64,000 nucleotides of DNA, from NCBI GenBank assembly GCA_025594325.1, contig JANHCV010000015.1:930001-994000 (forward strand), in the 5' to 3' direction. Shown here in pieces: positions 42,012-64,000 of the stretch. Under the pieces are notes generated by a model. That model worked only from the letters and a program-made list of their open reading frames with translations. It was not told where the DNA came from and did no database searches. This DNA is from Blastocladiella emersonii ATCC 22665. Its lineage: Eukaryota > Fungi > Blastocladiomycota. The translations under genes and the position numbers were made by a program. Each line of letters begins with the position of its first letter. Position 1 is the stretch's first letter.

Positions 42012-45000
42012 TCATACGTCGAAGATCGGGGTCCCGTTGTCGACGTCCTTGACGCTGAGCGTGGCGCCGAAAAGAGCCTCGGAGAGAAGCTGGCGCTCCT
42101 CCTTGACGTGAAGCTTCTTCTTACCGGTGGCAACCGCACCCGACGGGTTACGGCCGGCGAAGAGGACGGGCGAAGACAGCGGCTGTCCGTAGCTAGTGCT
42201 CTGCTGGACGAGGTGGGCATAGCGCGCCTGGGCGTCGGCGTGATGGGTCGAGTGGCGCAGGGCAGTGGCGATGCGGGGCTCGACAAAGGTCCAGGGACCC
42301 ATGTTCATGGGCTCCTCCTGGACCCACTTGACGCGGGCATTGGGGTACTGGTCAACAAAGTCGCGGACCTTGTCGAAGGGGAAGGGCGTGAACTGCTCGA
42401 TGCGGGCAATGGCAACGTCCTTGACCTGGTTCACCTCGCGAGCGCGCAGAAGCGAGTAGTAAACCTGGCCAGCGCAAAGGACGACCGTTTTGATCTCCTC
42501 GGGAGCGGCAATGGACTCGGGGGCAATCTCCGGGATGAAGCGCTGGAAACGAGTGCCCGCCACCATGTCGGCGAGGGACGAGCGAGCGAGAGGGTGGCGC
42601 AGCAGCGACTTAGAGAAGGGCAGGATGAGGGGCTTGCGGAAGTCGCGGTGGATCTGGCGGCGCAGGGCATGGAAGTAGTTGGCAGGCGTCGAAGGGTAGA
42701 CGACCTGGATGTTGCAGTCCTGGTGCTGGCGCGACATCTCCTGGGGCGAGGGGAACTTGAACGGGTCCTCGTCGGCGAGCTGGAGGAAGCGCTCGATGCG
42801 GGCCGACGAGTGCTCGGGACCCTGGCCGTCAAAGCCATGGGGCAAGTTCATGACGAGGCCGGTGCGCTGGAGCCACTTCTTCTCGCCCGAGGCGACGAAC
42901 TGGTCGATGATGACCTGGGCCGTGTTGGCAAAGTCACCGAATTGGGCTTCCCAGATGACGAGCGAGTTGGGGTTGACGAGCGAGTAACCGAGCTCGAAGC
43001 CCAGAACGCCGTACTCGGAGAGCGACGAGTTGGACACGGTGAAGGCGGCCTGGTCGGGCGACAGGTCGTTGAGTGCCGTGTAGGTGCCCTCGGTCTTCTG
43101 GTCGTGCAGGACTGCGTGGCGCTGCGAGAAGGTGCCGCGTTCCACGTCCTGGCCGGAGAGGCGAACATGGGTGCGCTCCATGAGGAGCGAGCCAAAGGCA
43201 AGGGCCTCGGCCGTCGACCAGTCAATGCCGTCGCCCTCCTGGATAGTCTTGGAGCGGTTCTTGAGGATACGGTTGAGCAGGTTGTGGATGTTGAAGCCCT
43301 CGGGGTAGGACGAGACCTTGCCGCCGATCTGCGACAGCAGCTCGCGGTCGACGCCCGTGTCGCGGGCAGGGACAATCTCGTCGGCGAGCTCCTTGGGCGA
43401 CTTGAAGCCGTGCCAGTTGGAGGAGACCCAGTCCTTGGGGGTCGGAGTGTACTCCTTGGACTTCTCGTAGCTCTCCTCGAGCAGCGACCAGACGCGCTTC
43501 TTGATGGCCTCGATCTCGTCGGCCGTGAAGGAGCCCTCGGTGAGCAGCTGCTGGACGTACTTGTCGAGGACGGGGACCTGCTTAGAGATGGTCTTGTACA
43601 TGCGCGGCTGAGTGAAGGAGGGCTGGTCGATCTCGTTGTGCCCGTGGCGGCGATAGCACACAATGTCGATGACGACGTCCTTCTTGAAGGTCTGGCGCCA
43701 CTCGGCGGCGAGATTGCAGGCGAACACGACAGCCTCGACGTCGTCGCCGTTCACGTGGAGGATGGGCGCGCCGACGGTCTTGGCCACGTCCGAGCAGTAG
43801 GGCGTGGAGCGCGAGAAGCGCGGGTCCGTGGTGAAGCCGATCTGGTTGTTGACAATGATGTGGACGGTGCCGCCCGTGGCGTACGACTTGAGGTCGGCGA
43901 AGCCGAGCGTCTCGTAGACGACGCCCTGGCCGGCAAAGGCGGCGTCGCCGTGGAGGAGGACGGGCATGGCCTTGCTGCGCTCGTTGTCGCCGGCGTAGAA
44001 CTGGATGGCGCGGGTCTTGCCCTCCACCACGGGGTTGACGGCCTCGAGGTGCGAGGGGTTGGCGACGAGCGAGAGGTGGACGCGCTTGCCCGAAGGGGTG
44101 GGGCGGTCGTAGTTCATGCCGAGGTGGTACTTGACATCCCCCGAGCCCTCGGCCACGTTGGGCTCGACGGTGCCCGAGAACTCGCAGAAGATGGACTCGT
44201 TCGGCTTGCGCACAACGTTGCTGAGGACGTTGAGGCGGCCGCGATGGGGCATGCCCATGACGACGCTCTCGACGCCGAGGTCGACGGAGCGATCAATGAG
44301 GGCCTTCATACCGGGGATGAGCGACTCGCAGCCCTCGAGGCCAAAGCGCTTCTCCGAGGGGTACTTTTGCGCAACGAAGCGCTCGAACGAGTCAGACCAG
44401 GCGAGGCGGTCGAGGATCATGGCCTTGTCGGCCTTGGAGAACTTGACGCGGTTCGGGATCTCGACGCGCTCGCGCAGCCAGTCGCACTGACCGCGGTCGG
44501 GGATGTGGGCGTACTCGATGCCGAGGGTGCTGCAGTACGTGTCCTTGAGGCGGGCGACAATCTCGCGCAGGGTGAGCTGGGGCGACTGAGTGCGGAAGCC
44601 GGGCAGCATGCCGGGGCCGAGCGAGAACTTGCGGTCGAGGTCGGCGTCGGTGAAACCGTAGTACTTTGGGTCGAGCTCGGGCGGCGTGGTGGGGTCGAGG
44701 TCCGCATCGTGGATGCCGAGCGGGTCGAGCTGGGCGAGCTGGTGGCCGCGGACCTGGTGGGCGCGGGCGAGCAGCTGGACCTTGAGGTGGTCGGCGATCT
44801 CCGAGGGGCTAGCGCCGGCGCCGGCGGCGGGCTCGGCAAAGTTGGCGAGCGGCAGGGTGGCGGAGCCCTCGAGGCCGAGCGTGGGCGGTGCGGCAAAGGC
44901 GTGGCCGCGCGGGGCGCCCTTGGCGACGTTGGCAAAATAGGTCTGCCACGAGACGTGGACCGAGGCGGGGTCGCGCTGCCACGCGGCGTACATCTCGTCG

Positions 45001-45265
45001 ACGTAGTTGGCCGAGGCGCCGGCGAGGAAGCCCTCGTTGTCGGCGGCGGTGGCGGCGTAGTGGCGGCGGGGCAGGGCGCGCAGAGCGGCCGAAGCGGGGC
45101 TATGCGTGGCGGGGGGTGCGCGAGAGGTCGGGTGGACGGTCAGCATGCGATCGGGCAGCGTCGCGCGGCGTTGGGGGCATCAGAGGCGTACCGCGGCACC
45201 AGGGCGGCCGGCGAGCGGCGGGCGAGCGCCCGCGCGGTCGATGCCAGTAGCAGGCGCGAGGACAT
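42012..45265 (-). CDS. KGD1: 2-oxoglutarate dehydrogenase E1 (intron 45191-45100)
   Basis: [77 protein letters not shown]. Confidence 0.98.
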
Positions 45266-48035: not shown

Positions 48036-49959
48036 TCACACAACCAGAGACCAATCCTTGACGAGCCATGCGTCCGCCATCTCTTCGCTGTTAATCCACG
48101 CCTCAAAGTCCTGCGAGCTCGTCTCAGTCGCGTTCCCAAGAAGCTTGAGAGACGCCGCGAGGGATGCTACACGCACACATCGAGGGCGTGGTGGGATAGT
48201 TAGCGTGAGCGTGCAATGGCGGCTTCGGAGGCGACAACAGTACACCACAACTCAATGAATGAAGCGACGTACCGCCGACCCAGGGGCCGCATTGGAACTG
48301 ACCGTTGCCTGGCGTGACGAAGCGCAGCACGTTTTCAACGCCCGCCAAAGCCTCGTACCGCTTGTCGGTCGCCAGGGTATGGAGAGTCTGATCGCGGACA
48401 CGGGAAAGGAAGCCAGGCAGGAGGGTAGTTCCGCCCGACACAACAATGTTCCGCGCACACTCGCCACGCACGTCGCGTGGACACTTCAGGAGGACGTCCA
48501 AGAGCGCCGTTACAACAGACCGCGCATCCGAATCCCCGTCAAAGAGCGTCTCGGCGGCGCGCTCACGCACCCACCCAGGGAGAATGAGCTTCATGTTGCG
48601 ATTGCCACCGATCGGGAGTCCGCGCTCGCCGAGTGGGTAGTACACGGTTGATGCACGCGATTTGTAAATACGGTACTGGTTGACAAGGCGAGGAGGACCG
48701 TCAGTGGCACTTGGTGAATCCACAGGGGCAGGCGACGCGGTTCGAGGCATGCTCGATTCTGTGTCTGGAAGGTTGTTGCTGCTGCTGCCGGGGATGGCAA
48801 ATAGCGACTGGGAATTCGCAGAGTTGATCCCAGCCGGCGGCAATGACGGAACAGGGGGCGCATTGGGTTCGGGTGGGACAGGGCCCAGTGACGAGGCAAG
48901 CTCCTCTTCCGTCGGTTCCGTAACTGTAACCGACTCTCCTGCCTCTGGCACGCCGCCAACAAACAGGGCGCGACACTTGATTTCCTCCAAAAACTCGGTT
49001 GTGAGCAGCTGCGCGACGATTTCATCCGTCCAAGGAACGAGCGTGTGTCCATGACCGACGCCAGCAGCCAGGGCAAGAGTGTCGGGCGATCCGATACCAA
49101 GTCGGCTGGTCAGCCCAAGGGCCCAGTTACTCCACTTGAACCAGAATGCCGTGATTGCGGACAAGTTCGCAACGCGCTCGGCAAACGACGAGGTACGGGA
49201 AAGCGTGAGCTCTCCAGCGCCAGGGAGCTGGCGTCCATGTCCTGCACCGCCGTTATAGGCGCGATAGTCATCGATGGGCGTGAGAAGCGATCCGAACTTG
49301 GTCAGAAGATCCTTGACATTGGCGAGTACGGCATCGCCCGCGACGGGAACCGAGGTGGCATGCGTGTACAGGACGCGATGGTCGTAAACGGGCACGACCG
49401 ACGTCTCCAAATGCCCAGACTCGACTACAATGCCCGCAGACTGGCCAGTGGTAAGCACCGTCATCAAGTCCGCGGGGGCAAACTGGAGGCTTGAGACGCG
49501 GAAACGCTCGAAAAGAACTTTGGCCACGGTTTGCTTGAGCAAGATTGGCATCAAGGCAGGCTCACAGACGATCAACGTTTTGCCCTTGGGGTCAGTGAGC
49601 AGGTAGCGGAAGAAGACGTCGGTAAGGTGATCGGCGAGGTAGAACTCGAGTCGGTTGGCGTTCCTCTGGTCAAAGAATCCCGCGTCCCAGAACTGCACGC
49701 GATCTGCCGTGGCCGCCGACGGGTGGCGAGACCGGTTGGTGACAATGAAGCGTGGCGAGTGCTCGCCAGCGAAACCGACCTTGGTATACATCGACCCGAT
49801 GTCGAGAACAATCCGGTCGTCCGACGTGTAAGGGGTCGTGCTCGCCGTCGTGCGCGACCGGAGCAGCGCCGCAATGTCAGCCGAAGCAAGACTAGCGCGC
49901 GTCGCTGCTGCAGAGGTCCGGTTGCCTGCGGTATCGAGGGCGCGCCGAATTCGATCCAT
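48036..49959 (-). CDS. ARP10: Actin-related protein 10 (dynactin pointed-end Arp10/Arp11) with a large insertion; 3' intron about 48263-48170
   Basis: IVLDIGSMYTKVGFAGE..PRFI, FFRYLLTDPK...IVCE, GIVVESGHLETSVVPVY, LLKCPRDVR...NIVVSGGTTLLPGF, WVG|ASLAASL. Confidence 0.82.
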
Positions 49960-50209
49960 GTAGTTGCTAGTCCTTACATTCAAGGAAAACAGGGAGTAAG
50001 CACGGTGCAGCAAGCAACGAGCGGCGCTGGCGCCTCTCTCCAGGGGATGCTCTCTCTGCCTTGCTTCACGCCCACTCAGCGCCACTCCGATCCGATCATG
50101 TGATTGGTTCTTGTTCGCAACCGCTTGCTTTCGACGCTCGACGATGCGAACGCCTCCATGCTCCACTGACTCCCGTATTTGCAAACGAGTACATCAGTGA
50201 CTTGGGGCA

Positions 50210-51844: not shown

Positions 51845-53284
51845 GTGACTGCGTCAGTTGTGGTGTCCATTCGCCTTGAAGCCCAAACTGTGGTCCTCCG
51901 CCGCGTGTGCCTCGTGCTGCTCAACAGCCCCGACTTCCGCTTCGATGACGAAAAGGTTGAGGCTGCTTACTGGGCACGCGCGGAGCAGCGCTACGTCCAG
52001 TACCTCTCGCTCATGGAGCACACGCTCGTCGAAGGTCACGCTCTCCCCCTACCGCCGCTCGACGTGCTTATGATGTGGCTCGTCCATGTCAAGGACTCGC
52101 ACCGTTATTCCGAGGACCTCGTGCGCGTTTTCGGCGACATCAAACTTCTTCACTTTGTCTTCCCGCTTGACGAGGTCAACGCGTACCTCCAAGCCACTGG
52201 CGCGCCCGTTTCCAGCTCGGGCGCGACGATTTCGGATGCTTCCTGGCAGGACTTTGTTCCCGCAAGCCACGCCCAGTCGTGGACCCAGTTCAGTGGTCAG
52301 GCCTTTGTCCTTGACGCGGAGCAGGTCGCCGCGCCCTGGACCCTGGCATGCCCCTTCTGCCACCACGACCAGGCTTGGGAGTCGGAGCTCTACTCAGAGA
52401 TGCGTACGGGTTCCCGCATGCTCTTCTGTGAGTCGTGCGACAAGTGGATCACGCTGCCCACCGTCTCGGCGTGGCGCCTTGTGGAGGACCTCCGTAAGGC
52501 CGAGAAGGGCCAGGGCCACGTCGCTGGTACCCTCCTTAACTTCGCCAAGGGCAAGATCGACTACAAGCTCGCGCACTCGGTGCACAAGCTGCTCTTCTTC
52601 ACGCACGAGAAGTCCCTGACCGAGATCCTCGAGGCTCGCCTCAACGAGCGCGACGTCGTCAACCCGTGGTCCGAGCTCGATCTGGCCGCCATCCTCCACG
52701 ACTACGTCCAGGCCGCCGTGGACAAGGAGTACTCGGGCAAGGCCAAGGAGCTCCGCCGCAAGGCGGACATTGTCACTGGCAAGATCCTCTCGTACTACCA
52801 GAACGTCATGACGCCGCTTTCTCTCGACCTCATCGTCGCTCGGAACAACTGGGCAAAGCTGTCGCGCGACATTGCGGACCACGTTGAGGGCGGCGACGGC
52901 AGCGTCGCGTTTGACAACGTTGCGGCCCAAACGGTCATCGATCGCTACGCCAAGTTCATGCAGCTGCTCGAGGAGCGGCGCAAGGCGTCCCTCAAGGACT
53001 CGGAGCGCTACAAGAACCTTGTGCCTGCCATCGACATTCTCCTCGCCCATCGCTGCCATCTTCTGGACCCGCTCGCGTACAAGAAGTACTGCGCGTACAA
53101 GTTTGGCAAGATCATGGACTTCAGCCGCTTCACCTGCAAGGCTGAGCTCATTGCCGAATACCAGGATATGGCTGTGTTGTGGAGCCAGAAGTACACGACG
53201 CCCTTCGACCTCCCGTTCAAGAAGAAGAAGAAGTCCAAGGGCATCAAGAAGCTTGTTGGCATGTTCTTTGGCGGGAGCAAGTGA
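51845..53284 (+). CDS. Glycine-rich domain-containing/DUF1399-family protein (true start unresolved)
   Basis: Two family repeats, LPPLDVLMMWLVH...Y..D and RYAKFMQL...LVPAIDILLAH..HLLDP..Y, with strong codon bias. Confidence 0.75.
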   Translation: MTASVVVSIRLEAQTVVLRRVCLVLLNSPDFRFDDEKVEAAYWARAEQRYVQYLSLMEHTLVEGHALPLPPLDVLMMWLVHVKDSHRYSEDLVRVFGDIKLLHFVFPLDEVNAYLQATGAPVSSSGATISDASWQDFVPASHAQSWTQFSGQAFVLDAEQVAAPWTLACPFCHHDQAWESELYSEMRTGSRMLFCESCDKWITLPTVSAWRLVEDLRKAEKGQGHVAGTLLNFAKGKIDYKLAHSVHKLLFFTHEKSLTEILEARLNERDVVNPWSELDLAAILHDYVQAAVDKEYSGKAKELRRKADIVTGKILSYYQNVMTPLSLDLIVARNNWAKLSRDIADHVEGGDGSVAFDNVAAQTVIDRYAKFMQLLEERRKASLKDSERYKNLVPAIDILLAHRCHLLDPLAYKKYCAYKFGKIMDFSRFTCKAELIAEYQDMAVLWSQKYTTPFDLPFKKKKKSKGIKKLVGMFFGGSK

Positions 53285-53378
53285 CCAAGCTTGGTCATCC
53301 TCACACGTGGTTCGCTCGCCCCCACCACATAAATTGCGATTGATTGTTTCACAAACCCTCCAGACCAACTTGAAATGA

Positions 53379-56300
53379 GAAGGTGGAGAGTCGGATCCAG
53401 GCGAGCGGCGCGAGGGCCTCTTCAACAGTGACTTGCGCGCGGCGCTCAACTCGATTCTGGGCCGCAAGCGCGTCAACGCCACCATCGATTACTATCAAGG
53501 TACGAACGACGAACCGACCGTCTGGGACCCCGTCGAGGTGAAGCGGCGGTTGGCCGCGGAGGTGGCGGGGTGGTTCGACCGGGTTGACCTCCCGCCGCTT
53601 CCAGCGGAGTGGGCTGCTGCGTTTGCCCCGCTCGACCACGTTGACCCGGCCATATGGAGCTCGCTCATGGACCCTATTTCGGCGGGTGAGCTCGACGCCG
53701 CACTGAAGGCGGTCCATCCTGACAAGGCGCCCGGCCCGTCTGGCATCACGTATCGTTTCCTGCGCGAGTCGGGCCCGCGCGCGCGTGCCGACCTGCTGAG
53801 GCTCTTCAACGACATTCTCCGCACGGGCGTCGCTCCCGCTCAGTGGCGCGAGGGCTCCATCTACCTGATCCCGAAGACCGACGCAGGGTACACGGGCACC
53901 GCTGCGGCGATGCGGCCCATCACGCTCATGGAGACCGCGTCGAAGCGGTTTATGAAGATCCTCGTGTCGCGCATGATGCACGTCCTCGTTGAGCATGACG
54001 TGCTGCGCGGCGCAAAGTACTCTGTTCTGCCCGGGACAGATACGGCCGTCCCGATCCAGCTCCTCTCGTCCGCCATTGACCACGCCCGGGACTCGGACAA
54101 GGCCATGTACGTGTACTTTGAGGACAAGAGCAAGGCGTTCGACACGGTCCCGCACTCGATCCTGCGGCTGGCCCTGCGCCGCATCCGCCTGCCTGAGCCG
54201 TTCATTGAGTTGTACTGCACGCAATTCCGTGAGGGTCGCACATCGCGTGTGATCACCGCGTATGGGCTCACCGAACCGATCCCGTGTCTCCGCGTCGTGC
54301 CCCAGGGCGCCGTTGAGTCCCCGCTAATGTGGTCCTGTCTCTACGATCCCCTCCTTTGTAACGATATTTCGAAAGGCGCAGATGACGCTTTCCCTCTCCT
54401 CCCGTATGCAGGTCGCGGTTCCTTCAAGTCCGCGCACGCTCGGCCTGGTTACACCCCGCCGAGACGACTCTTCCCTGGCACCAAGCACCGCCCACCCGTC
54501 AAGCTCAAGAACCTGTCGTTCGTGGACGATGCGGCCTTCTTCGCGTGCACGCCAGGCGGCCTCCGCCGCACCGTGGCACGCGTCGACTCGTTCAACGCGG
54601 CCTGCGGCATTCGCTCCAATGCCGCCAAGGGCGCCGTGCTGTCAATCAACTCTAAACGAGAGCCGCTGATCAAGTCCAACGACGTCGAGGTGCCAAGGAT
54701 TTCGAGCGATGGAGCGTTTCGCTACCTGGGCGTCTTCCTCAACGCGACGGGCACGGGTGGCCCGGCCGTAGAGGCGATGGAGGAGACGTTCGGGCGCGCG
54801 ATGCTCTCGCTGCGAAACAAGAAGATCACGGCCAAGATGGCCGTGTACGTCATCAACGCGGTCGTCTGGCCTGCCATGGTGTACCGCTCTCGCAACTTTG
54901 TGCCCAAGCTCCGCCGCTTGCAGAAGTGGGACGCGTCCGCGCGTGCTCTCATTCGCAAGAAGCTGCATGTCGCGAGCGCCTTCCACGCGTCAGCGCTCCA
55001 CCATCTCGCGATCCTCGCGCTTGCGTCCATCGAGGAGCAGGTCACCCGGTACCACATGAAGGCGGTCATCTCTTCTCTCGACCACTGCGATCTCATGATC
55101 CGCACGGCAGTCCGCTGCTCGCTCTCAGCTTTGCAGACCTATCTCACGGTCCCTTACTCGCCGCTTGCCGTCCCAACCAGCGAGCCGACTGCGGAGATTC
55201 CATGCTACTTTGGCGGCTTGCTCGAACTCATGCGCGTCCGGCGCCTCTCGATTGCCGATCTTAGCGGCGAGTATACGATCGGCAACCCCGCCACGGACTT
55301 GCCAATACGCCAGCTGGTGCCCTGGGGGCAGATCCCTCCCACTGTCCGCCGCGCCATGCGGGGCTACTTCATCTCGAACGTCTCGCAGCTTACTCAGCAT
55401 GGCAAGATTGCAGATGGCACCAACCCACAGTGCGCTGAGGAGTTGCTTTCGGGCCGCTTCAACCCAGCGACCAGGTGTTTCGTGCAAGTCCCTGAGCGAG
55501 CCCAGTTCATCGAGCTGGCGAGCCGCTTGCTCCAGGCCTATCTTGCCGACCCTCATGCCCACCGACAGTGGGGCCCGTGCGCAGCCTTTTGCACCCGCGA
55601 GCCCTACCCACTCAGTGTTGACGACCAAGTTGCTCCACCCATCAACATCCGCGAGGCCTTCACCGCAGGCCTTCGCGTGACACAAGTCCCGGCTCAGGCG
55701 GGCCCGCTCGACCTCGATCCTGCACTGGTGCCTGTCTACACGGACGGCTCCATGGTGCCAGCTGCGGACGGGGTCGGGTCGTCCCGCCTTGGAGCGGGCG
55801 TGTGGTTCCCGACGCTTGGTGTCCGTCTGTCAGCGCGCGTCTCGCCTGGCGTAGCTTCTTCTACGCGAGCCGAGGCGTGGGCGATCGCGCTTGCGGTCGC
55901 CGCGGCACCACAGCGCTCGCGGATCCACATCTACTCTGACTCCCAGGCTGCCATTGCATCGGCCATCCGCGTTCTATCGTTCCTTTCCTCCTCCTCGTCT
56001 GATTCTGGCTTTCCTTGTTCCCTCAGTTCTACCGACGCATGGTCGTTTGCAGTGGCAGCCGCGCGTGCCCGCCGCGTGACCTTCACAATCTCCTGGGTCC
56101 GCGGGCACGCCGGCGTTGAGGGGAACGAGATCGCTGACGGGCTCGCCGCTGACGGGGTCAATCTGGCCCAAGAGCTCGTCCTCGCTCCCCCCTTCGCCAA
56201 ACAGATCCGGTTAGATGTTCAGCATGCGCTGTATTTTGATGACGTCCCCGTTCCCACATCCTTCCCTGCATTCCTCAAGATCCTGTCCACTGCACGCTGC

Positions 56301-57959
56301 GATGCGACCCTGCGCTCCAAGTCCGCCCTCCTCTCCTCCCTCCACACCTCCCCTGACCCCGATGAGCACCCTGACATGCTTGCGACCTCACTGGCCATTT
56401 GCTCCGGCTCCCGCCCGCTCGATAAGCGCACCTCCAGCGCTGCGAACCGCGACATCGTCTATCGCGTTCGCCACCTCCTTGGGATCACACCCACTCGCTC
56501 ACTGCTGCACGCCCGCCATCCTACTCTAGTCACTTCACGTACTGCTATTGGCCTTCCGGCGTGCCCTCGCTCTCCCGCTGGCCAGCCCAGCCTGTCGCCC
56601 TGCTCGGTCTCGATTATTGTTCATTCGCTCCCTCTCTCGCTACTGCTCGTTTGACGCTACTGGTCTGATTTGCTCCGTCCGTTTGTCCTATCTTCCCTCC
56701 TTCCCTCACTTCTTCCCCTTTGCTCCTCGACGTGCGTGGTCCAGGCCTTGCTGAATTGCAGCTCTGCCAGAAAAGGCCGGCGCCTGTCGTACAGTGGATA
56801 CTCTGCTTGCAGGTTACAACCGCTGTTAAGAAATAAATCAAAGGTTCCAAAAAAAAATACTCTAGTCACTTCACCGGTGTGTCCTAGGTGCCAAGTAGCC
56901 ATTGACGACGGAAGCCACTGGATGATCTGCACCCGTAACGCCGCGGCCGTGTCCGCAGCGCTGGCCTCTGCCCAAAAGCCCATTGAGCGCTATGCTCTCG
57001 CTCCAACTCGACCGCGACCTCGCTCGACCCGTCCTCGCGGCCATCACGTCCGTCGCCTCCCGATCCCTCTGGCGCGGCGCCTGGCTCTCTCACTCTGCTG
57101 GCTGCGCCGAGGCCGACCCACTCGATTTTTCTGAAGCTCCGCCGCGCGAGCCGCGTGAGCGGGCCCGCCGCCCATTTGGCCAGCCCATTGTCACATTCAA
57201 GTTCATCAACCGCCACCACTACTGCTCTCGCTGTCTGAGCTTGCTCCATTCCCAGGTCCCCAACCCGTCTGGGCGTGAAGAAGACCCGCCAGTGTGCCCG
57301 CCGTCCACCGCGGCCCAGGTGGCTCTTGTTGCAGATCCCTCCGTCCGACTTTGGCTGCTCGGTTCCCCAAGGCACATCCAGTGATGTGACTAGACCAAGG
57401 ATCGGCGCAGTCGACGCAAGTCCAGTAGCACCAGGTGTTTGCGCGCGGTACTGACCCATCCACTTTCTCTCGTTCTGACGACGATGAAACGCATGATCCG
57501 CCACTGAATGGCGCTGACGCACAAGAGAAAAAGAAGCAGAAAAACAAAAAGAAAAGAAACGCAAAAAGAAGAACGTCCGCACAAAAAGATGGAAAAACAT
57601 CTGACGAACCTCACAGGCCATGCCCAATACCACAGCACTGCCACGGGTCCATTGGCATATCCTCGCGCTCTAGCTGGTCACGCCAGCGTGTCTCTCTGCT
57701 CGGTCTCTCTTTACTGCTCTTCGTTCGCTCTCTTAGCTCGCTGCTCGAGCTCGCTCTCTCTTCGCCTCGTTCGCCGATCTCTCTCGTACTCCCCTCTCCT
57801 CCCACAATTCTTCCCCCTATGCTCCTCGACGTGCACGGTCCGGGCTTGTCGTGCTGTGGCTTGCCCACAAAAATGCTGCTGCCCGTTGCGCAGTGGATAT
57901 TCTGCTTGCAGTTCACAACCGCTGTTAAGGAATAAATGCATTGGTTCCAAAAAAAAAAA
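53379..57959 (+). mobile_element. 5'-truncated non-LTR retrotransposon (LINE) with RT, RNase H and a CCHC knuckle, ending in AATAAA and poly(A)
   Basis: Open frame from about 53379 to 56538: KAPGPSG, MRPITL, EDKSKAFDTV, PQGAVESP, FVDD, FRYLG; RNase H YTDGS...EAWAI...YSDSQ...WVRGHAG..GNE.AD; CPRC...H...C at about 56880-56930; AATAAA at 57931 and A11 at 57949-57959. No endonuclease domain is seen. Confidence 0.95.
56539..56857 (+). mobile_element. 319-bp nested retroposed insert (3' end of a related LINE subfamily, or a SINE) with a 17-bp TSD
   Basis: TACTCTAGTCACTTCAC occurs at 56522-56538 and 56858-56874. AATAAA is at 56832 and A9 at 56849-56857. The insert aligns to the host 3' end (about 57634-57959). 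Confidence 0.92.
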
Positions 57960-58560
57960 GACAATTAACTGCGTGGATTGTTTACTATATTTCCATGGTC
58001 AGTTTTATTGTTGCTTTGAATTTACGATTTATGGGTCCTGAACAAGCTGGACATGTGAATAGTCAAAGACTTGACTATGGTTTTGTTTGAGTGCCATGAC
58101 AATTACCTACGTGGCTTGTATACTCTATTTCCATGGTCAGATATTTGTTGGTTCGATATTACGATTTATGGGTCCTCAACCAGCTTGACATGCGGGAAAG
58201 CAAAGATTAGAATATGGTTTTGATTAAGTACCATGACAATCATCTGCGTGGCTGGTTTACTATATTTCCATGGTCAGATATTTTGTTGGTTCGATACTGT
58301 GATGTATGGGTCCCTGGCCAGCTGGACACACGGTAAAGCAAAGACTTGAAGATGGTTTTGTTTGAGTACCATAACAATCATGTACGAGGTTGGTTTACTA
58401 TCTTTCTGTTGTCAAATATTTAGTTGCCGTGATACTGTGATTTATGGGTCCCTGGCTAGCAGGACAAGCGGGTAGTCAAAGATTTGAATATGGTTTTGTT
58501 CGACTACCATGACAATTGTCTCCGTGGCTGGTTTGGTACGTCCCTATCATTGGTAAATTC
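57960..58560. repeat. 138-bp satellite monomers (first partial sub-array)
   Basis: The CATGGTCAG-type motif recurs at 57997, 58135, 58272 and 58410. Confidence 0.9.
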
Positions 58561-59088
58561 ATTGCGTGCATATTGTGATTCGTGGAGGGTCAATGTTGCT
58601 GCTACCTTGCCCGCATGCGCGCTGCGTCCGCCGACCCACCTAGGCCAGACAGGAAGGAAAGGGGACCCCAAGAGCCCCACGACACCACTGTAGCTCCACT
58701 ACCACCACAGCACCCACCAACACCACCTACAAACAAACACGACCCGCCAAGGCGCACGCAGCGACACCCGCAGCCATGCATGCCATGGCGTTGGTGGATG
58801 GTGGCCAACCAATCCTCATCACACACGACACGTATGAAGGTCTGCCTGCATCCACCCATCCATTCATTCAACACACGCTCCCTCACGCACCCTTTCACTT
58901 GTGTTGCTTGACAGCCAGCTAGCCAGGTCCGGCTGCTGCTACCTATCCATTCTGCCTGCCTCCCACGCCCGCCGCGTCCTGAGCCAGGCAGGGCTGTGCT
59001 GCGATACACGGCCGCGGCCAGTCCACGGTAATGGTACCCATGCAGTACGTTCCATGGCCGCCCGGCCACCCTAGCTTGGTGCTTGTGT

Positions 59089-59165
59089 GTCACCTTGGTC
59101 ACCTTGGTCACCTTGGTCACCTTGGTCACCTTGGTCACTTGGTCACTTGGTCTCTTGGTCTCTTG
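59089..59165. repeat. (GTCACCTTG)5 followed by 4 related 8-mers; repeated at 61879-61955
   Basis: Direct reading of the tandem units. Confidence 0.9.
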
Positions 59166-60086
59166 GCGCTTGTGATGGAGGTCTATCTAACCCAGGCACG
59201 CACGGACACAGGCCCGCACGCCCACACGCACTCCCGCCAGGAGCATGTGGTGTGTGGGTCATCATCCACCATTCAGTTTGTAGTCCCTAGCACCCCTTGG
59301 CCCCAGCACTGTCTCCTTCCTGCAGGAGGAGCCCTGCCGCCTCAGCCCTCCGCAGCCAGCCCTCTGCAGCCCAGTGAAGCAGTACGGCTGCTACGCTGTT
59401 TGCAAGGTACGGTGGCCAGGGCGACGCAGGTGCTGTGGTGTTGCTTGCCACTTGGCTGGCGACAGGGGCTGGCGCACCCATTGCAAGGCGTTCTGACGGA
59501 CCCCGCGGCCATGAAAGCATGGGGGCAGCACTGGACACGAGTCTATCAATCAACGGCACTGGGAGGGCAGGCAGGCGCACCCGTTGGAGCGAGCCGACCT
59601 GGATGATAAATCATTGTTGAGTTGAGGACGCCTTGCATGCCTGCCGTTCATGCGAGCGTGTGTGACACCAGGGTGGCCGTTTGCGCCGTGTGCGCACGGC
59701 GTGGAGCGCCAGGCGCTGTGCGCTGTGCGCGCTGCACGGTGCGTGGTGTACATCCGTCAGCGGGTGAGTGGTTTCACGCGCATAGACAGAGGAGCTGCTC
59801 GGAACCCTCGTTGGCCCATCATCATGCAGGGCTTGGAGTGGACAGCAGAGCTGGCAGCCTGGAGGAGACCAGTCGTATATTGACAAACCGAACCCCTCTC
59901 AGACTACATACGAGATAGATAATATCTACTGGGTGGGCGCTGTCAGTCAGGCTGTCAGTGTGGCAGGCTGCCAGGCTGCCAGGCTGCCAGGGCTCATCAT
60001 TCATTCCTTTGTTGGCTGGGACGGCAACCAGAGAGCGCGGGCCCACAAAGACTTGCGAGGCGGTGTGGGTGTTCGGATAGCAGGTA

Positions 60087-60150
60087 GGCAAGTTGGCAGG
60101 TTGCCAGGTTGGCAGGTTGGCAGGTTGGCAGGTTGGCAGGCTGGCAGGTT
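60087..60150. repeat. (GGCAGGTT)8 degenerate octamer array; repeated at 62877-62940; related GCCAGGCT run at 59962-59992
   Basis: Direct reading of the tandem units. Confidence 0.9.
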
Positions 60151-60239
60151 GGCCGTTTACTTAGTTGATTGGACCGTGTACTTTGACGACGGGCTCCATA
60201 CTTAGGGGATCGAAGAGTTGGCTAGTGGAGTGTGCACAA

Positions 60240-61350
60240 AGCGGTAGATTTGAATATCTGGCGCTTTGGTTCCTTGCCCACCTGGACGTGAGGGTATACG
60301 AAGATTTGATTGAGTATAGTTATGTTTGAGTACCATGACAATTATCAGCGTGGCGGGATTGATACATCCCGCTTGTCGGAAATTTTGTTGGTTCAATACT
60401 GTGATTTATCGGCCCTTGCCCACCTGGACATGGGGCACTCGAAGATTTGAGTATGGTTTCGTTTGAGTGCCATGACAATTATCTGCGTGGCTGGTTTACG
60501 ACATTTCTTTGGTCAGATATTGTGTTGCTGTGATACTGTGATTTATGGGTCCCTGGCTAGCTGGACAAGCGGGAAGTGAAAGATTTGAATATGGTTTTGT
60601 TTGAGTATCAAGACCATTACCTGCGTGGTCGGTTATGTAGACTCCTATGGTCAGATATTTTGTTGGTTTGATACTGTGATTTATGGGTCTCCAACCTGCT
60701 GGACATCTGGGAAGTCATAGATTTGAGTATGGTTTTGTTTGAGTACCATGACAATTATCTCCGCAGCTTGTTTACTATGTTTCCATGGTCAGTTTTATTG
60801 TTGCTTTGAATTTACGATTTATGGGTCCTGAACAAGCTGGACATGTGAATAGTCAAAGACTTGACTATGGTTTTGTTTGAGTGCCATGACAATTACCTAC
60901 GTGGCTTGTATACTCTATTTCCATGGTCAGATATTTGTTGGTTCGATATTACGATTTATGGGTCCTCAACCAGCTTGACATGCGGGAAAGCAAAGATTAG
61001 AATATGGTTTTGATTAAGTACCATGACAATCATCTGCGTGGCTGGTTTACTATATTTCCATGGTCAGATATTTTGTTGGTTCGATACTGTGATGTATGGG
61101 TCCCTGGCCAGCTGGACACACGGTAAAGCAAAGACTTGAAGATGGTTTTGTTTGAGTACCATAACAATCATGTACGAGGTTGGTTTACTATCTTTCTGTT
61201 GTCAAATATTTAGTTGCCGTGATACTGTGATTTATGGGTCCCTGGCTAGCAGGACAAGCGGGTAGTCAAAGATTTGAATATGGTTTTGTTCGACTACCAT
61301 GACAATTGTCTCCGTGGCTGGTTTGGTACGTCCCTATCATTGGTAAATTC
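60240..61350. repeat. 138-bp satellite sub-array (about 8 diverged monomers)
   Basis: The CCATGACAAT motif occurs at 60333, 60470, 60608, 60746, 60884, 61021, 61159 and 61297 (spacing 137-138). Confidence 0.93.
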
Positions 61351-63029
61351 ATTGCGTGCATATTGTGATTCGTGGAGGGTCAATGTTGCTGCTACCTTGC
61401 CCGCATGCGCGCTGCGTCCGCCGACCCACCTAGGCCAGACAGGAAGGAAAGGGGACCCCAAGAGCCCCACGACACCACTGTAGCTCCACTACCACCACAG
61501 CACCCACCAACACCACCTACAAACAAACACGACCCGCCAAGGCGCACGCAGCGACACCCGCAGCCATGCATGCCATGGCGTTGGTGGATGGTGGCCAACC
61601 AATCCTCATCACACACGACACGTATGAAGGTCTGCCTGCATCCACCCATCCATTCATTCAACACACGCTCCCTCACGCACCCTTTCACTTGTGTTGCTTG
61701 ACAGCCAGCTAGCCAGGTCCGGCTGCTGCTACCTATCCATTCTGCCTGCCTCCCACGCCCGCCGCGTCCTGAGCCAGGCAGGGCTGTGCTGCGATACACG
61801 GCCGCGGCCAGTCCACGGTAATGGTACCCATGCAGTACGTTCCATGGCCGCCCGGCCACCCTAGCTTGGTGCTTGTGTGTCACCTTGGTCACCTTGGTCA
61901 CCTTGGTCACCTTGGTCACCTTGGTCACTTGGTCGCTTGGTCTCTTGGTCTCTTGGCGCTTGTGATGGAGGTCTATCTAACCCAGGCACGCACGGACACA
62001 GGCCCGCACGCCCACACGCACTCCCGCCAGGAGCATGTGGTGTGTGGGTCATCATCCACCATTCAGTTTGTAGTCCCTAGCACCCCTTGGCCCCAGCACT
62101 GTCTCCTTCCTGCAGGAGGAGCCCTGCCGCCTCAGCCCTCCGCAGCCAGCCCTCTGCAGCCCAGTGAAGCAGTACGGCTGCTACGCTGTTTGCAAGGTAC
62201 GGTGGCCAGGGCGACGCAGGTGCTGTGGTGTTGCTTGCCACTTGGCTGGCGACAGGGGCTGGCGCACCCATTGCAAGGCGTTCTGACGGACCCCGCGGCC
62301 ATGAAAGCATGGGGGCAGCACTGGACACGAGTCTATCAATCAACGGCACTGGGAGGGCAGGCAGGCGCACCCGTTGGAGCGAGCCGACCTGGATGATAAA
62401 TCATTGTTGAGTTGAGGACGCCTTGCATGCCTGCCGTTCATGCGAGCGTGTGTGACACCAGGGTGGCCGTTTGCGCCGTGTGCGCACGGCGTGGAGCGCC
62501 AGGCGCTGTGCGCTGTGCGCGCTGCACGGTGCGTGGTGTACATCCGTCAGCGGGTGAGTGGTTTCACGCGCATAGACAGAGGAGCTGCTCGGAACCCTCG
62601 TTGGCCCATCATCATGCAGGGCTTGGAGTGGACAGCAGAGCTGGCAGCCTGGAGGAGACCAGTCGTATATTGACAAACCGAACCCCTCTCAGACTACATA
62701 CGAGATAGATAATATCTACTGGGTGGGCGCTGTCAGTCAGGCTGTCAGTGTGGCAGGCTGCCAGGCTGCCAGGCTGCCAGGGCTCATCATTCATTCCTTT
62801 GTTGGCTGGGACGGCAACCAGAGAGCGCGGGCCCACAAAGACTTGCGAGGCGGTGTGGGTGTTCGGATAGCAGGTAGGCAAGTTGGCAGGTTGCCAGGTT
62901 GGCAGGTTGGCAGGTTGGCAGGTTGGCAGGCTGGCAGGTTGGCCGTTTACTTAGTTGATTGGACCGTGTACTTTGACGACGGGCTCCATACTTAGGGGAT
63001 CGAAGAGTTGGCTAGTGGAGTGTGCACAA

Positions 63030-64000
63030 AGCGGTAGATTTGAATATCTGGCGCTTTGGTTCCTTGCCCACCTGGACGTGAGGGTATACGAAGATTTGAT
63101 TGAGTATAGTTATGTTTGAGTACCATGACAATTATCAGCGTGGCGGGATTGATACATCCCGCTTGTCGGAAATTTTGTTGGTTCAATACTGTGATTTATC
63201 GGCCCTTGCCCACCTGGACATGGGGCACTCGAAGATTTGAGTATGGTTTCGTTTGAGTGCCATGACAATTATCTGCGTGGCTGGTTTACGACATTTCTTT
63301 GGTCAGATATTGTGTTGCTGTGATACTGTGATTTATGGGTCCCTGGCTAGCTGGACAAGCGGGAAGTGAAAGATTTGAATATGGTTTTGTTTGAGTATCA
63401 AGACCATTACCTGCGTGGTCGGTTATGTAGACTCCTATGGTCAGATATTTTGTTGGTTTGATACTGTGATTTATGGGTCTCCAACCTGCTGGACATCTGG
63501 GAAGTCATAGATTTGAGTATGGTTTTGTTTGAGTACCATGACAATTATCTCCGCAGCTTGTTTACTATGTTTCCATGGTCAGTTTTATTGTTGCTTTGAA
63601 TTTACGATTTATGGGTCCTGAACAAGCTGGACATGTGAATAGTCAAAGACTTGACTATGGTTTTGTTTGAGTGCCATGACAATTACCTACGTGGCTTGTA
63701 TACTCTATTTCCATGGTCAGATATTTGTTGGTTCGATATTACGATTTATGGGTCCTCAACCAGCTTGACATGCGGGAAAGCAAAGATTAGAATATGGTTT
63801 TGATTAAGTACCATGACAATCATCTGCGTGGCTGGTTTACTATATTTCCATGGTCAGATATTTTGTTGGTTCGATACTGTGATGTATGGGTCCCTGGCCA
63901 GCTGGACACACGGTAAAGCAAAGACTTGAAGATGGTTTTGTTTGAGTACCATAACAATCATGTACGAGGTTGGTTTACTATCTTTCTGTTGTCAAATATT
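63030..64000. repeat. 138-bp satellite sub-array (next unit, truncated by window end)
   Basis: Identical by eye to 60240-61210 shifted by 2790. Confidence 0.93.

What the first reader, a model, noticed from the sequence alone, without database searches (positions are those of the whole stretch)
57960..64000. Higher-order repeat: 138-bp satellite monomers nested in a near-perfect 2790-bp unit (candidate centromere or subtelomere)
Seen: monomers within a unit are visibly diverged, most so at sub-array edges, with consensus about CCATGACAATTATCTGCGTGGCTGGTTTACTATATTTCCATGGTCAGATATTTTGTTGGTTCGATACTGTGATTTATGGGTCCCTGGCCAGCTGGACAAGCGGGAAGTCAAAGATTTGAATATGGTTTTGTTTGAGTA. In contrast, the 2790-bp units are almost identical (one SNP noticed). 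Each unit is about 8 AT-rich monomers plus a 1.6-kb GC-rich spacer. Established: diverged monomers in homogenised higher-order units, with near-nucleosome monomer length and adjacent retroelements, typify animal and plant centromeres; most characterised fungal centromeres are not organised this way. Inference: a satellite-type centromere or subtelomeric array in a zoosporic fungus, which I have not seen described.
Basis: partly seen in the sequence, partly recalled or inferred. Interest (0 to 1): 0.8.

Follow-up and report, generated by a model that had tools for sequence, protein, structure and literature searches.

The report
Candidate satellite centromere, LINE-capped edges
The repeat is real and is the left edge of a mid-chromosome block, at least 120 kb long, of near-identical 2.8-kb non-coding units in the water fungus Blastocladiella emersonii; it is one of seven chromosome-specific blocks, bordered at each mapped edge by copies of one jumping gene, and they are the best candidates for tandem-repeat centromeres, a type the fungal centromere papers I checked do not describe, but no experiment yet shows it.

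Summary
From window 57960 to 64000 run units of 2790 bp. Each has about 1.14 kb of diverged 138-bp AT-rich monomers (68-86% alike) and a 1.65-kb GC-rich spacer. Units are at least 99.9% identical.

The array runs to the end of contig C7 (80 kb) and resumes at the start of C4 (40 kb) on the same strand. It is one internal array of at least 120 kb, with about 1 Mb and 1.4 Mb of ordinary DNA on its two sides.

The genome is B. emersonii ATCC 22665. It holds seven such arrays: six span contig pairs and one of 146 kb is complete on C17. Together they make 315 units and about 0.98 Mb. Each has its own unit length, and units are 77-89% alike between arrays. None was found on C1, C3, C8, C15 or C18.

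The arrays are not subtelomeric, not rDNA spacer and not coding. At 13 array edges a close copy of one LINE-like retroelement points its 3' end at the array. At the three edges I could read, its poly(A) tail touches the first repeat base. The two copies I could read lack the endonuclease domain.

Centromere is the best reading (about 0.55) and is untested. Two earlier follow-ups in this scan reached the same reading, one apparently on the C4 half of this array and one on another array.

The parts
57960..64000 (+). Left 6 kb of the macrosatellite array: 2.2 units of 2790 bp. It continues for 74 kb beyond the window to the end of C7 and resumes at C4:1-39727.
57960..58610 (+). First, partial block of 138-bp AT-rich monomers. 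The array starts inside a monomer, and six of the first 30 bases differ from later units.
58611..60261 (+). GC-rich non-coding spacer, copy 1. It holds 9-bp and 8-bp microsatellites and a 19-mer at 58856-58874 that is identical in six arrays.
60262..61400 (+). Full monomer block: seven monomers at 60333-61296 plus decayed edge monomers. GC 0.42.
61401..63051 (+). GC-rich spacer, copy 2. GC 0.61.
63052..64000 (+). Third monomer block, cut by the window end.
51877..57959 (+). 5'-truncated copy of a LINE-like (non-LTR) retroelement that caps the array edge. Its 3' end faces the array. An inverted copy, 95.9% identical over 4.7 kb, caps the other edge on C4.
51845..53284 (+). C-terminal part of the element's upstream ORF (1856 aa in the C4 copy). 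It has a GRDP-like domain and no AP-endonuclease similarity.
53433..56654 (+). Open 1073-aa ORF with reverse transcriptase (aa 146-434) and RNase H (aa 766-909). The closest solved relatives are LINE-1 ORF2p and R2.
56655..57959 (+). 3' untranslated region of the element. AATAAA lies at 57931-57936 and an A11 tail at 57949-57959, directly touching the first array base at 57960.

Best explanation
The finding is the left edge of a chromosome-internal macrosatellite of at least 120 kb that joins contigs C7 and C4 of Blastocladiella emersonii ATCC 22665. It is one of seven related arrays, each specific to one chromosome. I read these arrays as regional, tandem-repeat centromeres.

Shown here:
- The unit is non-coding: an AT-rich block of 138-bp monomers plus a GC-rich spacer.
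- Units are kept 99.9% identical within an array but are only 77-89% alike between arrays. Variants are shared by neighbouring units, which points to local unequal exchange or gene conversion.
- The ordered monomer block is older than the split of at least three arrays.
- Each mapped array edge carries a 5'-truncated copy of one LINE family with its 3' end facing the array. At three sequenced edges the poly(A) tail touches the array. Truncation points differ from edge to edge, so these look like separate insertions. The two copies I could read have no endonuclease domain.

Inferred:
- The kinetochore assembles on CENP-A chromatin somewhere in the array, most likely on the AT-rich monomer blocks.
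- Array edges break repeatedly, and the breaks are healed when the retroelement's RNA is reverse-transcribed from the free 3' end on the array side. This would explain the mirror-image orientation.
For: Extent and pairing:
- The array fills C7 to its end with 29 units and restarts at C4:1 on the same strand with 14 units.
- Units differ by 0-3 substitutions and one 24-bp indel.

Genome map:
- An invariant spacer 19-mer occurs 279 times. Every hit lies in arrays on C2/C5, C4/C7, C6/C21, C9, C10/C11 or C19/C20.
- A one-base variant of the 19-mer occurs 36 times, only at C17:2.063-2.208 Mb.
- Contig-end orientations, unit lengths and sequence types all fit six joins across assembly gaps.
- Arrays lie 1.7 and 2.8 Mb from the telomeres at the heads of C2 and C11.

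Unit properties:
- Whole units are colinear between arrays at 77-89% identity.
- Substitutions show no three-base periodicity, and ORFs are not conserved between arrays.
- ORFs in the unit have no Pfam hit.
- Monomers have positional counterparts at 84-99% in the C11 and C20 arrays, against 77-86% for other monomers of the same unit.

Retroelement:
- Close copies (at least 75% amino-acid identity, most 82-100%) lie within about 5 kb of 13 edges with the 3' end towards the array.
- Poly(A)-to-array junctions were read at C7, C4 and C16.
- The reverse transcriptase resembles LINE-1 and R2.
- Environmental relatives carry an AP endonuclease, but the C7 and C4 copies do not.

Context:
- Housekeeping genes lie 8-17 kb from the array on both sides.
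- A CENP-C gene is present.
- rDNA lies elsewhere.
- The genome paper reports at least six chromosomes and mentions neither centromeres nor satellites (PMC9730499).
- There is a precedent for a centromere-specific LINE in an early-diverging fungus, Mucor Grem-LINE1 (10.1101/706580).
Against: - There are no CENP-A, Hi-C, methylation or RNA data.
- The chromosome number is unknown. Contigs C1 (5.1 Mb), C3, C8, C15 and C18 carry no array, and I could not show that they are arms of the seven array-bearing chromosomes.
- The spacer is better conserved between arrays than the monomers. This hints at a function of its own and is unusual for centromere satellites.
- There is almost no gene-poor pericentric zone.
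- Monomers show no dyad symmetry beyond shuffled controls.
- The edge rule has blemishes. A reversed, endonuclease-bearing fragment lies between the inward copy and the array on C9. A second, reversed fragment lies 8 kb out on C6. The right edge of the C17 array has an outward-facing 3' fragment that ends the contig.
Confidence: 0.55

Rival explanations
1. The arrays are non-centromeric heterochromatic macrosatellites. They would be selfish or neutral tandem amplifications, like knobs or the human D4Z4 and DXZ4 class, that happen to sit once on several chromosomes. The real centromeres would be short or unique sequences elsewhere.
For: No functional data tie the arrays to kinetochores. Five large contigs have no array. 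The unit is long and composite, with a conserved GC-rich spacer. Genes lie within 8 kb of the array. The characterised fungal centromeres in the papers I checked are not satellite arrays.
Against: A neutral amplification is not expected to give exactly one array per reconstructed contig pair, all of common descent, all internal, and all with the same element at their edges. Earlier follow-ups in this scan judged the other centromere candidates noted in this genome, the giant tRNA palindromes, to occur several times per contig (not checked here).
Confidence: 0.27
2. The arrays are tandem arrays of a non-coding RNA gene or regulatory module. The conserved 1.65-kb spacer would be the functional, transcribed part, and the 138-bp monomers would act as enhancer-like subrepeats, as in an rDNA spacer. 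The array would be a gene-dosage device, not a centromere.
For: The spacer is more conserved between arrays (0.86-0.96 per 60-nt bin) than the monomers (0.69-0.91). The layout of subrepeats plus a unique part resembles an rDNA intergenic spacer.
Against: There is no Rfam family hit. There is no convincing conserved secondary structure: z-scores of -1 to -4 appear on both strands against a lenient column-shuffle control. No rRNA genes lie nearby. The eight-base microsatellites inside the spacer vary in length. No RNA data could be obtained.
Confidence: 0.1
3. The array is subtelomeric or a relic of a chromosome end.
For: The arrays sit at contig ends, and distant relatives of the flanking element sit near other contig ends.
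Against: Array-bearing ends pair up by strand, unit length and sequence type. No telomere repeat adjoins any array. One array is fully internal on C17. The telomeres of C2 and C11 are 1.7 and 2.8 Mb away.
Confidence: 0.03
4. The array is an assembly artefact or rDNA intergenic spacer.
For: Near-perfect repeats at contig ends can come from a collapsed or over-expanded assembly.
Against: Units carry ordered, locally shared variants and two length classes. The edges are sharp and joined to unique DNA. The source is a HiFi assembly (PMC9730499). Units contain no rRNA, and SSU genes lie only at the head of C17.
Confidence: 0.03

Closest known systems
Chromosome-specific long-unit centromeric satellites of potato and chicken
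   Same: Tandem arrays of tens to hundreds of kb. Units are in the kilobase range, differ from chromosome to chromosome, and are highly homogenised within an array.
   Different: Those arrays were shown to bind CENH3 or CENP-A, and here nothing has been tested. Those organisms are a plant and an animal, and this one is a fungus. Here all seven arrays descend from one composite unit that has an internal block of 138-bp monomers.
Primate alpha-satellite higher-order repeats (PMC5052062, abstract seen)
   Same: Diverged monomers of near-nucleosome length are ordered inside a larger unit. The unit is homogenised within an array and is chromosome-specific. Monomers have positional counterparts in sister arrays.
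   Different: Alpha-satellite units consist only of monomers. Here 59% of the unit is a GC-rich non-monomeric spacer that is better conserved than the monomers. The arrays are 40-280 kb as assembled, not megabases.
Mucor circinelloides mosaic centromeres with Grem-LINE1 (10.1101/706580)
   Same: It is an early-diverging fungus in which a LINE-like element is found specifically next to centromeres and at scaffold ends that break inside them.
   Different: Mucor has a core of about 200 bp plus a motif, gene-free pericentric regions of 15-75 kb, no CENP-A and no satellite array. Its element carries an AP endonuclease. Here there are large satellite arrays, one element copy per edge with its poly(A) on the array, no endonuclease in the copies read, and a CENP-C gene.
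Retroelements that attach to free DNA ends: Drosophila HeT-A/TART, endonuclease-deficient Penelope-like elements at telomeres (from memory), and endonuclease-independent LINE-1 insertion at breaks (PMC9237045, listed; abstract only)
   Same: The poly(A) end is joined to pre-existing DNA as if primed from a free 3' end. The copies I read have no endonuclease. A sister family sits near contig ends in the same genome.
   Different: Here the DNA that acts as primer is the edge of an internal satellite array, on both sides in mirror image, and not a chromosome terminus. The mechanism is inferred from geometry only.
Inverted-repeat-flanked fungal centromeres (S. pombe from memory; Candida tropicalis, PMC7292649, abstract seen)
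   Same: A central domain lies between inverted repeats: the C7 and C4 flanks are 95.9% identical over 4.7 kb in inverted orientation.
   Different: Here the centre is a satellite array of at least 120 kb, not a unique core of a few kb. The arms are retroelement copies. They are no more alike within a locus than between loci (95-97% either way), so they are not homogenised per centromere.

Membership tests
Satellite (tandem-repeat) regional centromere | Occupied by CENP-A/CENH3 nucleosomes and kinetochore proteins | not testable with these tools
   No chromatin data. Only contig-level DNA runs from one sample were found.
Satellite (tandem-repeat) regional centromere | Exactly one per chromosome | tested here: inconclusive
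   There are seven arrays, each on its own contig or contig pair, and none on C1, C3, C8, C15 or C18. The chromosome number is unknown; the genome paper gives at least six (PMC9730499).
Satellite (tandem-repeat) regional centromere | Long homogenised tandem array, internal to the chromosome | tested here: met
   At least 120 kb, units 99.9% identical, with 0.99 and 1.4 Mb of other DNA on the two sides. Sister arrays are 40-279 kb as assembled.
Satellite (tandem-repeat) regional centromere | The organism has a conventional CENP-A/CENP-C kinetochore | tested here: inconclusive
   One gene with a CENP-C cupin domain scores 80.6 bits against a cut-off of 29. CENP-A itself was not looked for.
Alpha-satellite-type higher-order repeat | The unit is an integer multimer of monomers and nothing else | tested here: not met
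   1651 of 2790 bp are non-monomeric spacer.
Alpha-satellite-type higher-order repeat | Monomers diverge within a unit while units are near-identical, with position-specific monomer types | tested here: met
   Monomers are 68-86% alike and units 99.9% alike. Positional counterparts exist in the C11 and C20 arrays.
rDNA intergenic spacer | Alternates with, or adjoins, rRNA genes | tested here: not met
   No Rfam hit in the window. All 43 assembled units are 2766 or 2790 bp long. SSU rRNA genes lie only at C17:7.5k and 24.9k.
Subtelomeric repeat | Adjoins a telomere, with a fixed orientation towards it | tested here: not met
   No telomere repeat lies at any array-bearing end. Ends pair head-to-tail. 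One array is fully internal.
Protein-coding macrosatellite (D4Z4-like) | A conserved ORF in each unit | tested here: not met
   No Pfam hit. No codon periodicity of substitutions and no ORF position conserved across six arrays.
Non-LTR (LINE) retrotransposon (the flanking element) | LINE-type reverse transcriptase, 3' poly(A) and variable 5' truncation | tested here: met
   Best solved-structure matches are LINE-1 ORF2p and R2. AATAAA and an A11 tail are present. Copies start at amino acids 1, 130, 210, 451, 613, 696, 764, 842 or 873, and most end near 1046.
Non-LTR (LINE) retrotransposon (the flanking element) | AP-type or restriction-like endonuclease | tested here: not met
   No endonuclease domain in the C7 or C4 copies by Pfam at E up to 5, tblastn or BLASTP. 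It is present in relatives P0001 and P0003 and in the 79-80% copies on C11 and C21.

The most novel reading that the evidence does not exclude
A fungus has true satellite centromeres: chromosome-specific, homogenised arrays of a composite 2.6-4.2-kb unit. The centromere-arm boundaries are recurrent break sites. They are healed by an endonuclease-less LINE that is reverse-transcribed from the free 3' end of the array. As a result every centromere is bracketed by mirror-image retroelement copies whose poly(A) tails touch the satellite.
Probability: 0.3. Interest if true: 0.85.

Novelty: new variant of a known kind. Interest (0 to 1): 0.7.

Why it matters
The fungal centromeres described in the papers I checked are point, small regional, transposon-rich regional or mosaic types. 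A review of fungal genome architecture that covers centromeres does not use the word 'satellite' (PMC7385547). The B. emersonii genome paper mentions neither centromeres nor satellites.

If these arrays bind CENP-A, satellite centromeres of the animal and plant type also exist in a deep fungal branch. That would bear on whether this architecture is ancestral to the group that includes animals and fungi, or arises repeatedly.

B. emersonii has a small genome of about 33 Mb. Its arrays are only 40-280 kb as assembled, and one of 146 kb is complete. That would make it a tractable system for studying array homogenisation and centromere-edge dynamics.

The mirror-image, poly(A)-to-array retroelement caps are a specific, testable signature of how array edges are maintained.

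In practice, the map also tells assemblers which contig ends to join: C7-C4, C2-C5, C11-C10, C20-C19, C6-C21 and C9-C16.

Tried and rejected
Copy number and true array length could therefore not be estimated. Later local scripts left them out, except for whole-unit alignments run locally.
Edge structure at 10 of 13 edges rests on coordinates and strands only.
- Coding potential of the spacer: rejected.
- Conserved RNA structure in the spacer: weak and present on both strands, so not convincing.
- Dyad symmetry or hairpins in monomers: z-scores from -1.3 to +1.7, no signal.
- Relatives in metagenomes: two exact-pattern scans found nothing. This says little, because satellites evolve fast and the matches had to be exact.
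- Unit derived from the flanking element or from nearby DNA: no similarity.
- Two arrays on C9: rejected. The hits at 165-195 kb belong to one continuous array of 279 kb.
- A first whole-unit genome search was not scored because there were too many candidates.
- The first two literature searches were too loose to be useful.

Full report
OBSERVATION

Tandem Repeats Finder reports a 138-bp period at 57960-58534, 60310-61324 and 63100-64000, with 76-80% matches. It also finds small 8-, 9-, 14- and 16-bp repeats that recur exactly 2790 bp apart.

Base composition alternates between about 0.38-0.46 GC in the monomer blocks and 0.58-0.66 GC in the spacers. Measured directly, the monomer block 60262-61400 is 0.42 GC and the spacer 61401-63051 is 0.61 GC.

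At an offset of 2790 bp the second and third units show no mismatch. The first partial unit differs from the second at 7 positions. Six of them lie in the first 30 bases next to the edge, and one is at 59145.

Seven clear monomers (60333-61296) are 68-86% identical to one another, and a decayed monomer flanks the block on each side.

One correction applies: more than half of each unit is not made of monomers.

EXTENT

The window is C7:930001-994000 of a 32.65-Mb assembly in 21 contigs.

The array runs to the end of C7 with 29 unit anchors spaced 2790 or 2766 bp apart. It starts again at base 1 of C4 on the same strand, with 14 anchors, and ends sharply at about C4:39727.

The 41 complete assembled units differ from the majority sequence by 0-3 substitutions and one 24-bp indel. 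Variants are shared by neighbouring units. That is the signature of local unequal exchange or gene conversion. The assembled length is 119.8 kb, and an assembly gap of unknown size lies in the middle.

ORGANISM

A distant relative of the flanking retroelement is annotated as H9P43_008529 of Blastocladiella emersonii ATCC 22665. It sits on a contig of 1,500,809 bp, which is exactly the length of C3.

The assembly has 21 contigs, an N50 of 2,021,495 and an L50 of 6. Its telomere motif is AAACCT. All of these match the published assembly (PMC9730499). That paper infers at least six chromosomes and does not mention centromeres or satellites.

GENOME-WIDE MAP

I fetched the first and last 4 kb of every contig and compared them with my unit. 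Array sequence, both monomers and spacer, occurs at thirteen ends:
- C7 tail (+) and C4 head (+)
- C11 tail (+) and C10 tail (-)
- C20 tail (-) and C19 head (-)
- C6 tail (+) and C21 tail (-)
- C2 tail (-) and C5 head (-)
- C9 tail (-) and C16 head (-)
- the C17 tail

Strands fit a join in every pair. Unit lengths are specific to each pair: 2790/2766, 3335/3328, 3049, 2574, 3100/3124 and 2933 bp. The short array stub on C16 is 95.5% identical to the C9 type and at most 84% identical to the others.

A 19-mer in the spacer is invariant in six arrays. It occurs 279 times in the genome. All hits are accounted for:

| Contig | Hits |
|---|---|
| C2 | 17 |
| C5 | 67 |
| C4 | 14 |
| C7 | 29 |
| C6 | 12 |
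| C21 | 4 |
| C9 | 96 |
| C10 | 17 |
| C11 | 8 |
| C19 | 12 |
| C20 | 3 |

The counts for C6 and C21 are by subtraction from the strand totals.

The C17 unit carries a one-base variant of this 19-mer. The variant occurs 36 times, only at C17:2,063,276-2,208,172, with a period of 4.11-4.27 kb. This seventh array, about 146 kb, is fully assembled.

The total is 315 units and about 0.98 Mb. No array was seen on C1, C3, C8, C12-C15 or C18.

Terminal telomere repeats were seen only at the heads of C2 and C11. The arrays on those contigs begin 1.68 and 2.81 Mb from them. The arrays are therefore internal, not subtelomeric.

WHAT THE UNIT IS

Whole units, spacer plus monomers, are colinear between arrays at 77-89% identity. 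The C17 unit is 88% identical to mine. All seven arrays therefore descend from one composite unit.

The spacer is better conserved than the monomers: 0.86-0.96 against 0.69-0.91 identity per 60-nt bin.

Substitutions among six arrays show no three-base periodicity (p = 0.41 over 1.3 kb), and no ORF keeps its position. The ORFs in my unit have no Pfam match. The unit is non-coding.

Monomers m1-m7 of my unit find their best matches in colinear order in the C11 and C20 arrays at 84-99%. That is higher than their identity to other monomers of their own unit, which is 77-86%. The ordered monomer block is therefore older than the split of these arrays. Homogenisation now acts on whole units, as in a higher-order repeat.

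Other tests found nothing:
- No Rfam family matches.
- Monomers have no excess dyad symmetry.
- The spacer shows no convincing conserved RNA fold.
- Two exact-pattern scans of metagenome contigs found no relatives.

NOT rDNA

SSU rRNA genes were found only at C17:7,561-9,463 and C17:24,925-26,827. That is 2 Mb from the C17 array and on a different contig from mine.

THE EDGES

ORF 53433-56654 has reverse transcriptase and RNase H domains. It is most like LINE-1 ORF2p and R2 among solved structures. Its 3' untranslated region carries AATAAA at 57931-57936 and an A11 tail at 57949-57959. The next base, 57960, is the first base of the array.

On C4 the array ends in the middle of a monomer, against a run of seven T followed by the same 3' end read in reverse. 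The same is seen on C16.

The two flanks of my array are inverted copies, 95.9% identical over 4.7 kb. They are no more alike than copies at other arrays, which are 95-97% identical. They are therefore not homogenised within a locus.

A genome-wide protein search places close copies next to 13 array edges: C7, C4, C19, C20, C9, C16, C10, C11, C5, C2, C6, C21 and the left edge of C17. Most are 82-100% identical in amino acids, and one C6 fragment is 75%. In each case the 3' end points at the array.

The copies start at different amino acids (1, 130, 210, 451, 613, 696, 764, 842 and 873), and most end near 1046. This is the 5'-truncation pattern of separate LINE insertions.

Only three other close copies were scored elsewhere: C21:505k, C11:2229k and a fragment at C4:170k. 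No unit-like sequence lies outside the caps in 58 kb of C7 or 20 kb of C4.

There are exceptions to the edge rule:
- A reversed fragment with an endonuclease domain lies between the inward copy and the array on C9.
- A second, reversed fragment lies 8 kb out on C6.
- At the right edge of the C17 array, a 962-bp 3' fragment points outward, 380 bp beyond the array. Its poly(A) is the last sequence of the contig. I cannot explain this.

ENDONUCLEASE

Environmental relatives at 32-36% identity have AP endonuclease, reverse transcriptase and RNase H. The 79-80% copies on C11 and C21 have the endonuclease in the same long open frame.

In the C7 copy, and in the longer C4 copy, the region upstream of the reverse transcriptase is instead an ORF with a GRDP-like domain; it is 1856 aa long in C4. 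It has no endonuclease similarity by Pfam at E up to 5, by tblastn or by BLASTP.

An element without an endonuclease needs a pre-existing free 3' end. If the array side of a break supplies that end, the poly(A) will touch the array on both sides in mirror image, as observed. The AT-rich monomers offer T runs that can pair with poly(A). The arms are 62% GC and rarely do.

This mechanism is inferred from geometry only. Mirrored replication-fork direction, or selection against outward read-through into genes, could also give the orientation.

SURROUNDINGS

Ordinary genes lie close to the array:
- an actin-family gene at 48124-50184
- 2-oxoglutarate dehydrogenase E1 at 42012-45146
- a GTPase at 37079-38464
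- an ABC transporter at C4:56.3-58.4 kb

There is almost no gene-poor pericentric zone.

A gene with a CENP-C cupin domain exists at C16:633k.

INTERPRETATION

The following features are what centromeres would look like:
- seven arrays of common descent
- each array internal and specific to one chromosome
- arrays that are the main breakpoints of a HiFi assembly
- AT-rich cores in a GC-rich genome
- a dedicated retroelement family at their edges

The count agrees with the published minimum of six chromosomes. A centromere-specific LINE has a precedent in Mucor (10.1101/706580).

Against this, nothing functional has been measured, the karyotype is unknown, five large contigs lack arrays, and the conserved spacer is unexplained.

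I put the centromere reading at 0.55 and a non-centromeric macrosatellite at 0.27. A non-coding RNA or regulatory array gets 0.10. Subtelomere, artefact and rDNA together get about 0.06.

PRIOR WORK

I found no paper that links Blastocladiella to centromere sequences. A review of fungal genome architecture does not use the word 'satellite'.

Within this scan, two earlier follow-ups (s1-076320, apparently on the C4 half of this same array, and s1-276118) already concluded 'seven chromosome-specific arrays, candidate satellite centromeres'. I took that as a lead and re-derived the map independently.

New in this report:
- the complete unit census
- the fully assembled C17 array
- the positional counterparts of the monomers
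- the poly(A)-to-array junctions and the mirror orientation
- the missing endonuclease
- the locations of the rDNA and the CENP-C gene

Noticed in passing
G000 contig ends: C2:2883-4757, C6:5119-8233, C21:4031-5940, C4:1447135-1448675, C5:1370138-1373363, C15:2634443-2637226, C19:2009647-2012784, C3:1494520-1496391: A second, distant family of the same LINE type (31-58% amino-acid identity to the array-edge element) sits within a few kb of many contig ends, one of them next to the C2 telomere. The C3 copy (P0009) also shows no endonuclease domain. It may be a chromosome-end-associated retroelement family.
   Followed up: partly
L054 (C4 tail), L047 (C15 tail), L048 (C16 tail), L032 (C20 head, reverse strand); L037 (C3 tail), L038 (C5 tail), L033 (C21 head, reverse strand): Two sets of contig ends finish in the same sequence. 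One set is a G/A-rich block ending '...CTCGGCTTTTGTCC'. The other is an AT-rich block. They are probably shared subtelomeric blocks where the assembler stopped. Rfam finds nothing in them.
   Followed up: partly
L049 (C17:2205774-2209773): 380 bp beyond the right edge of the complete C17 array lies a 962-bp copy of the LINE 3' untranslated region, 97% identical to window 56997-57958. It points away from the array, and the contig ends exactly at its poly(A). By analogy another array should follow, but every array-bearing contig end is already paired.
   Followed up: partly
G000:C17:7561-9463 and C17:24925-26827: Two SSU rRNA genes lie 17.4 kb apart at the head of C17. The rDNA repeat is therefore long and is cut by the contig end.
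   Followed up: no
L024 and L044 (C12 head and tail): The first 90 bases of the 58.8-kb contig C12 are the exact reverse complement of its last 90 bases. The contig may be a giant palindrome or a fold-back assembly product.
   Followed up: no
L022 (C10 head), L025 and L045 (C13 both ends), L030 (C18 head): Several contigs end in long CAG/CTG runs, so pure trinucleotide tracts are a second class of assembly break. Reverse-complemented C10 could join C18 through one of them.
   Followed up: no
G000:C16:633010-633261 (-): This is the only match to the CENP-C C-terminal cupin domain (80.6 bits), in an open frame of 1644 aa. It is the likely CENP-C gene and a handle for ChIP tagging.
   Followed up: no
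L013:4296-9866 (-) = C4:44296-49866; window 51845-53284: The array-edge retroelement has a very long upstream ORF (1856 aa) whose only recognisable part is a GRDP-like domain (PF07173). It stands where relatives carry the AP endonuclease. This is an unusual LINE architecture.
   Followed up: partly
L015 (C1:1-4000): Three tRNA genes lie in the first 3 kb of the largest contig, in line with the tRNA-rich repeats that other scan notes describe for this genome.
   Followed up: no
G000:C9:165000-443892: The C9 array (96 units) is much less regular than the others. Unit spacing ranges from 2.2 to 3.6 kb in runs of similar length, which suggests several sub-domains or layers within one array.
   Followed up: no
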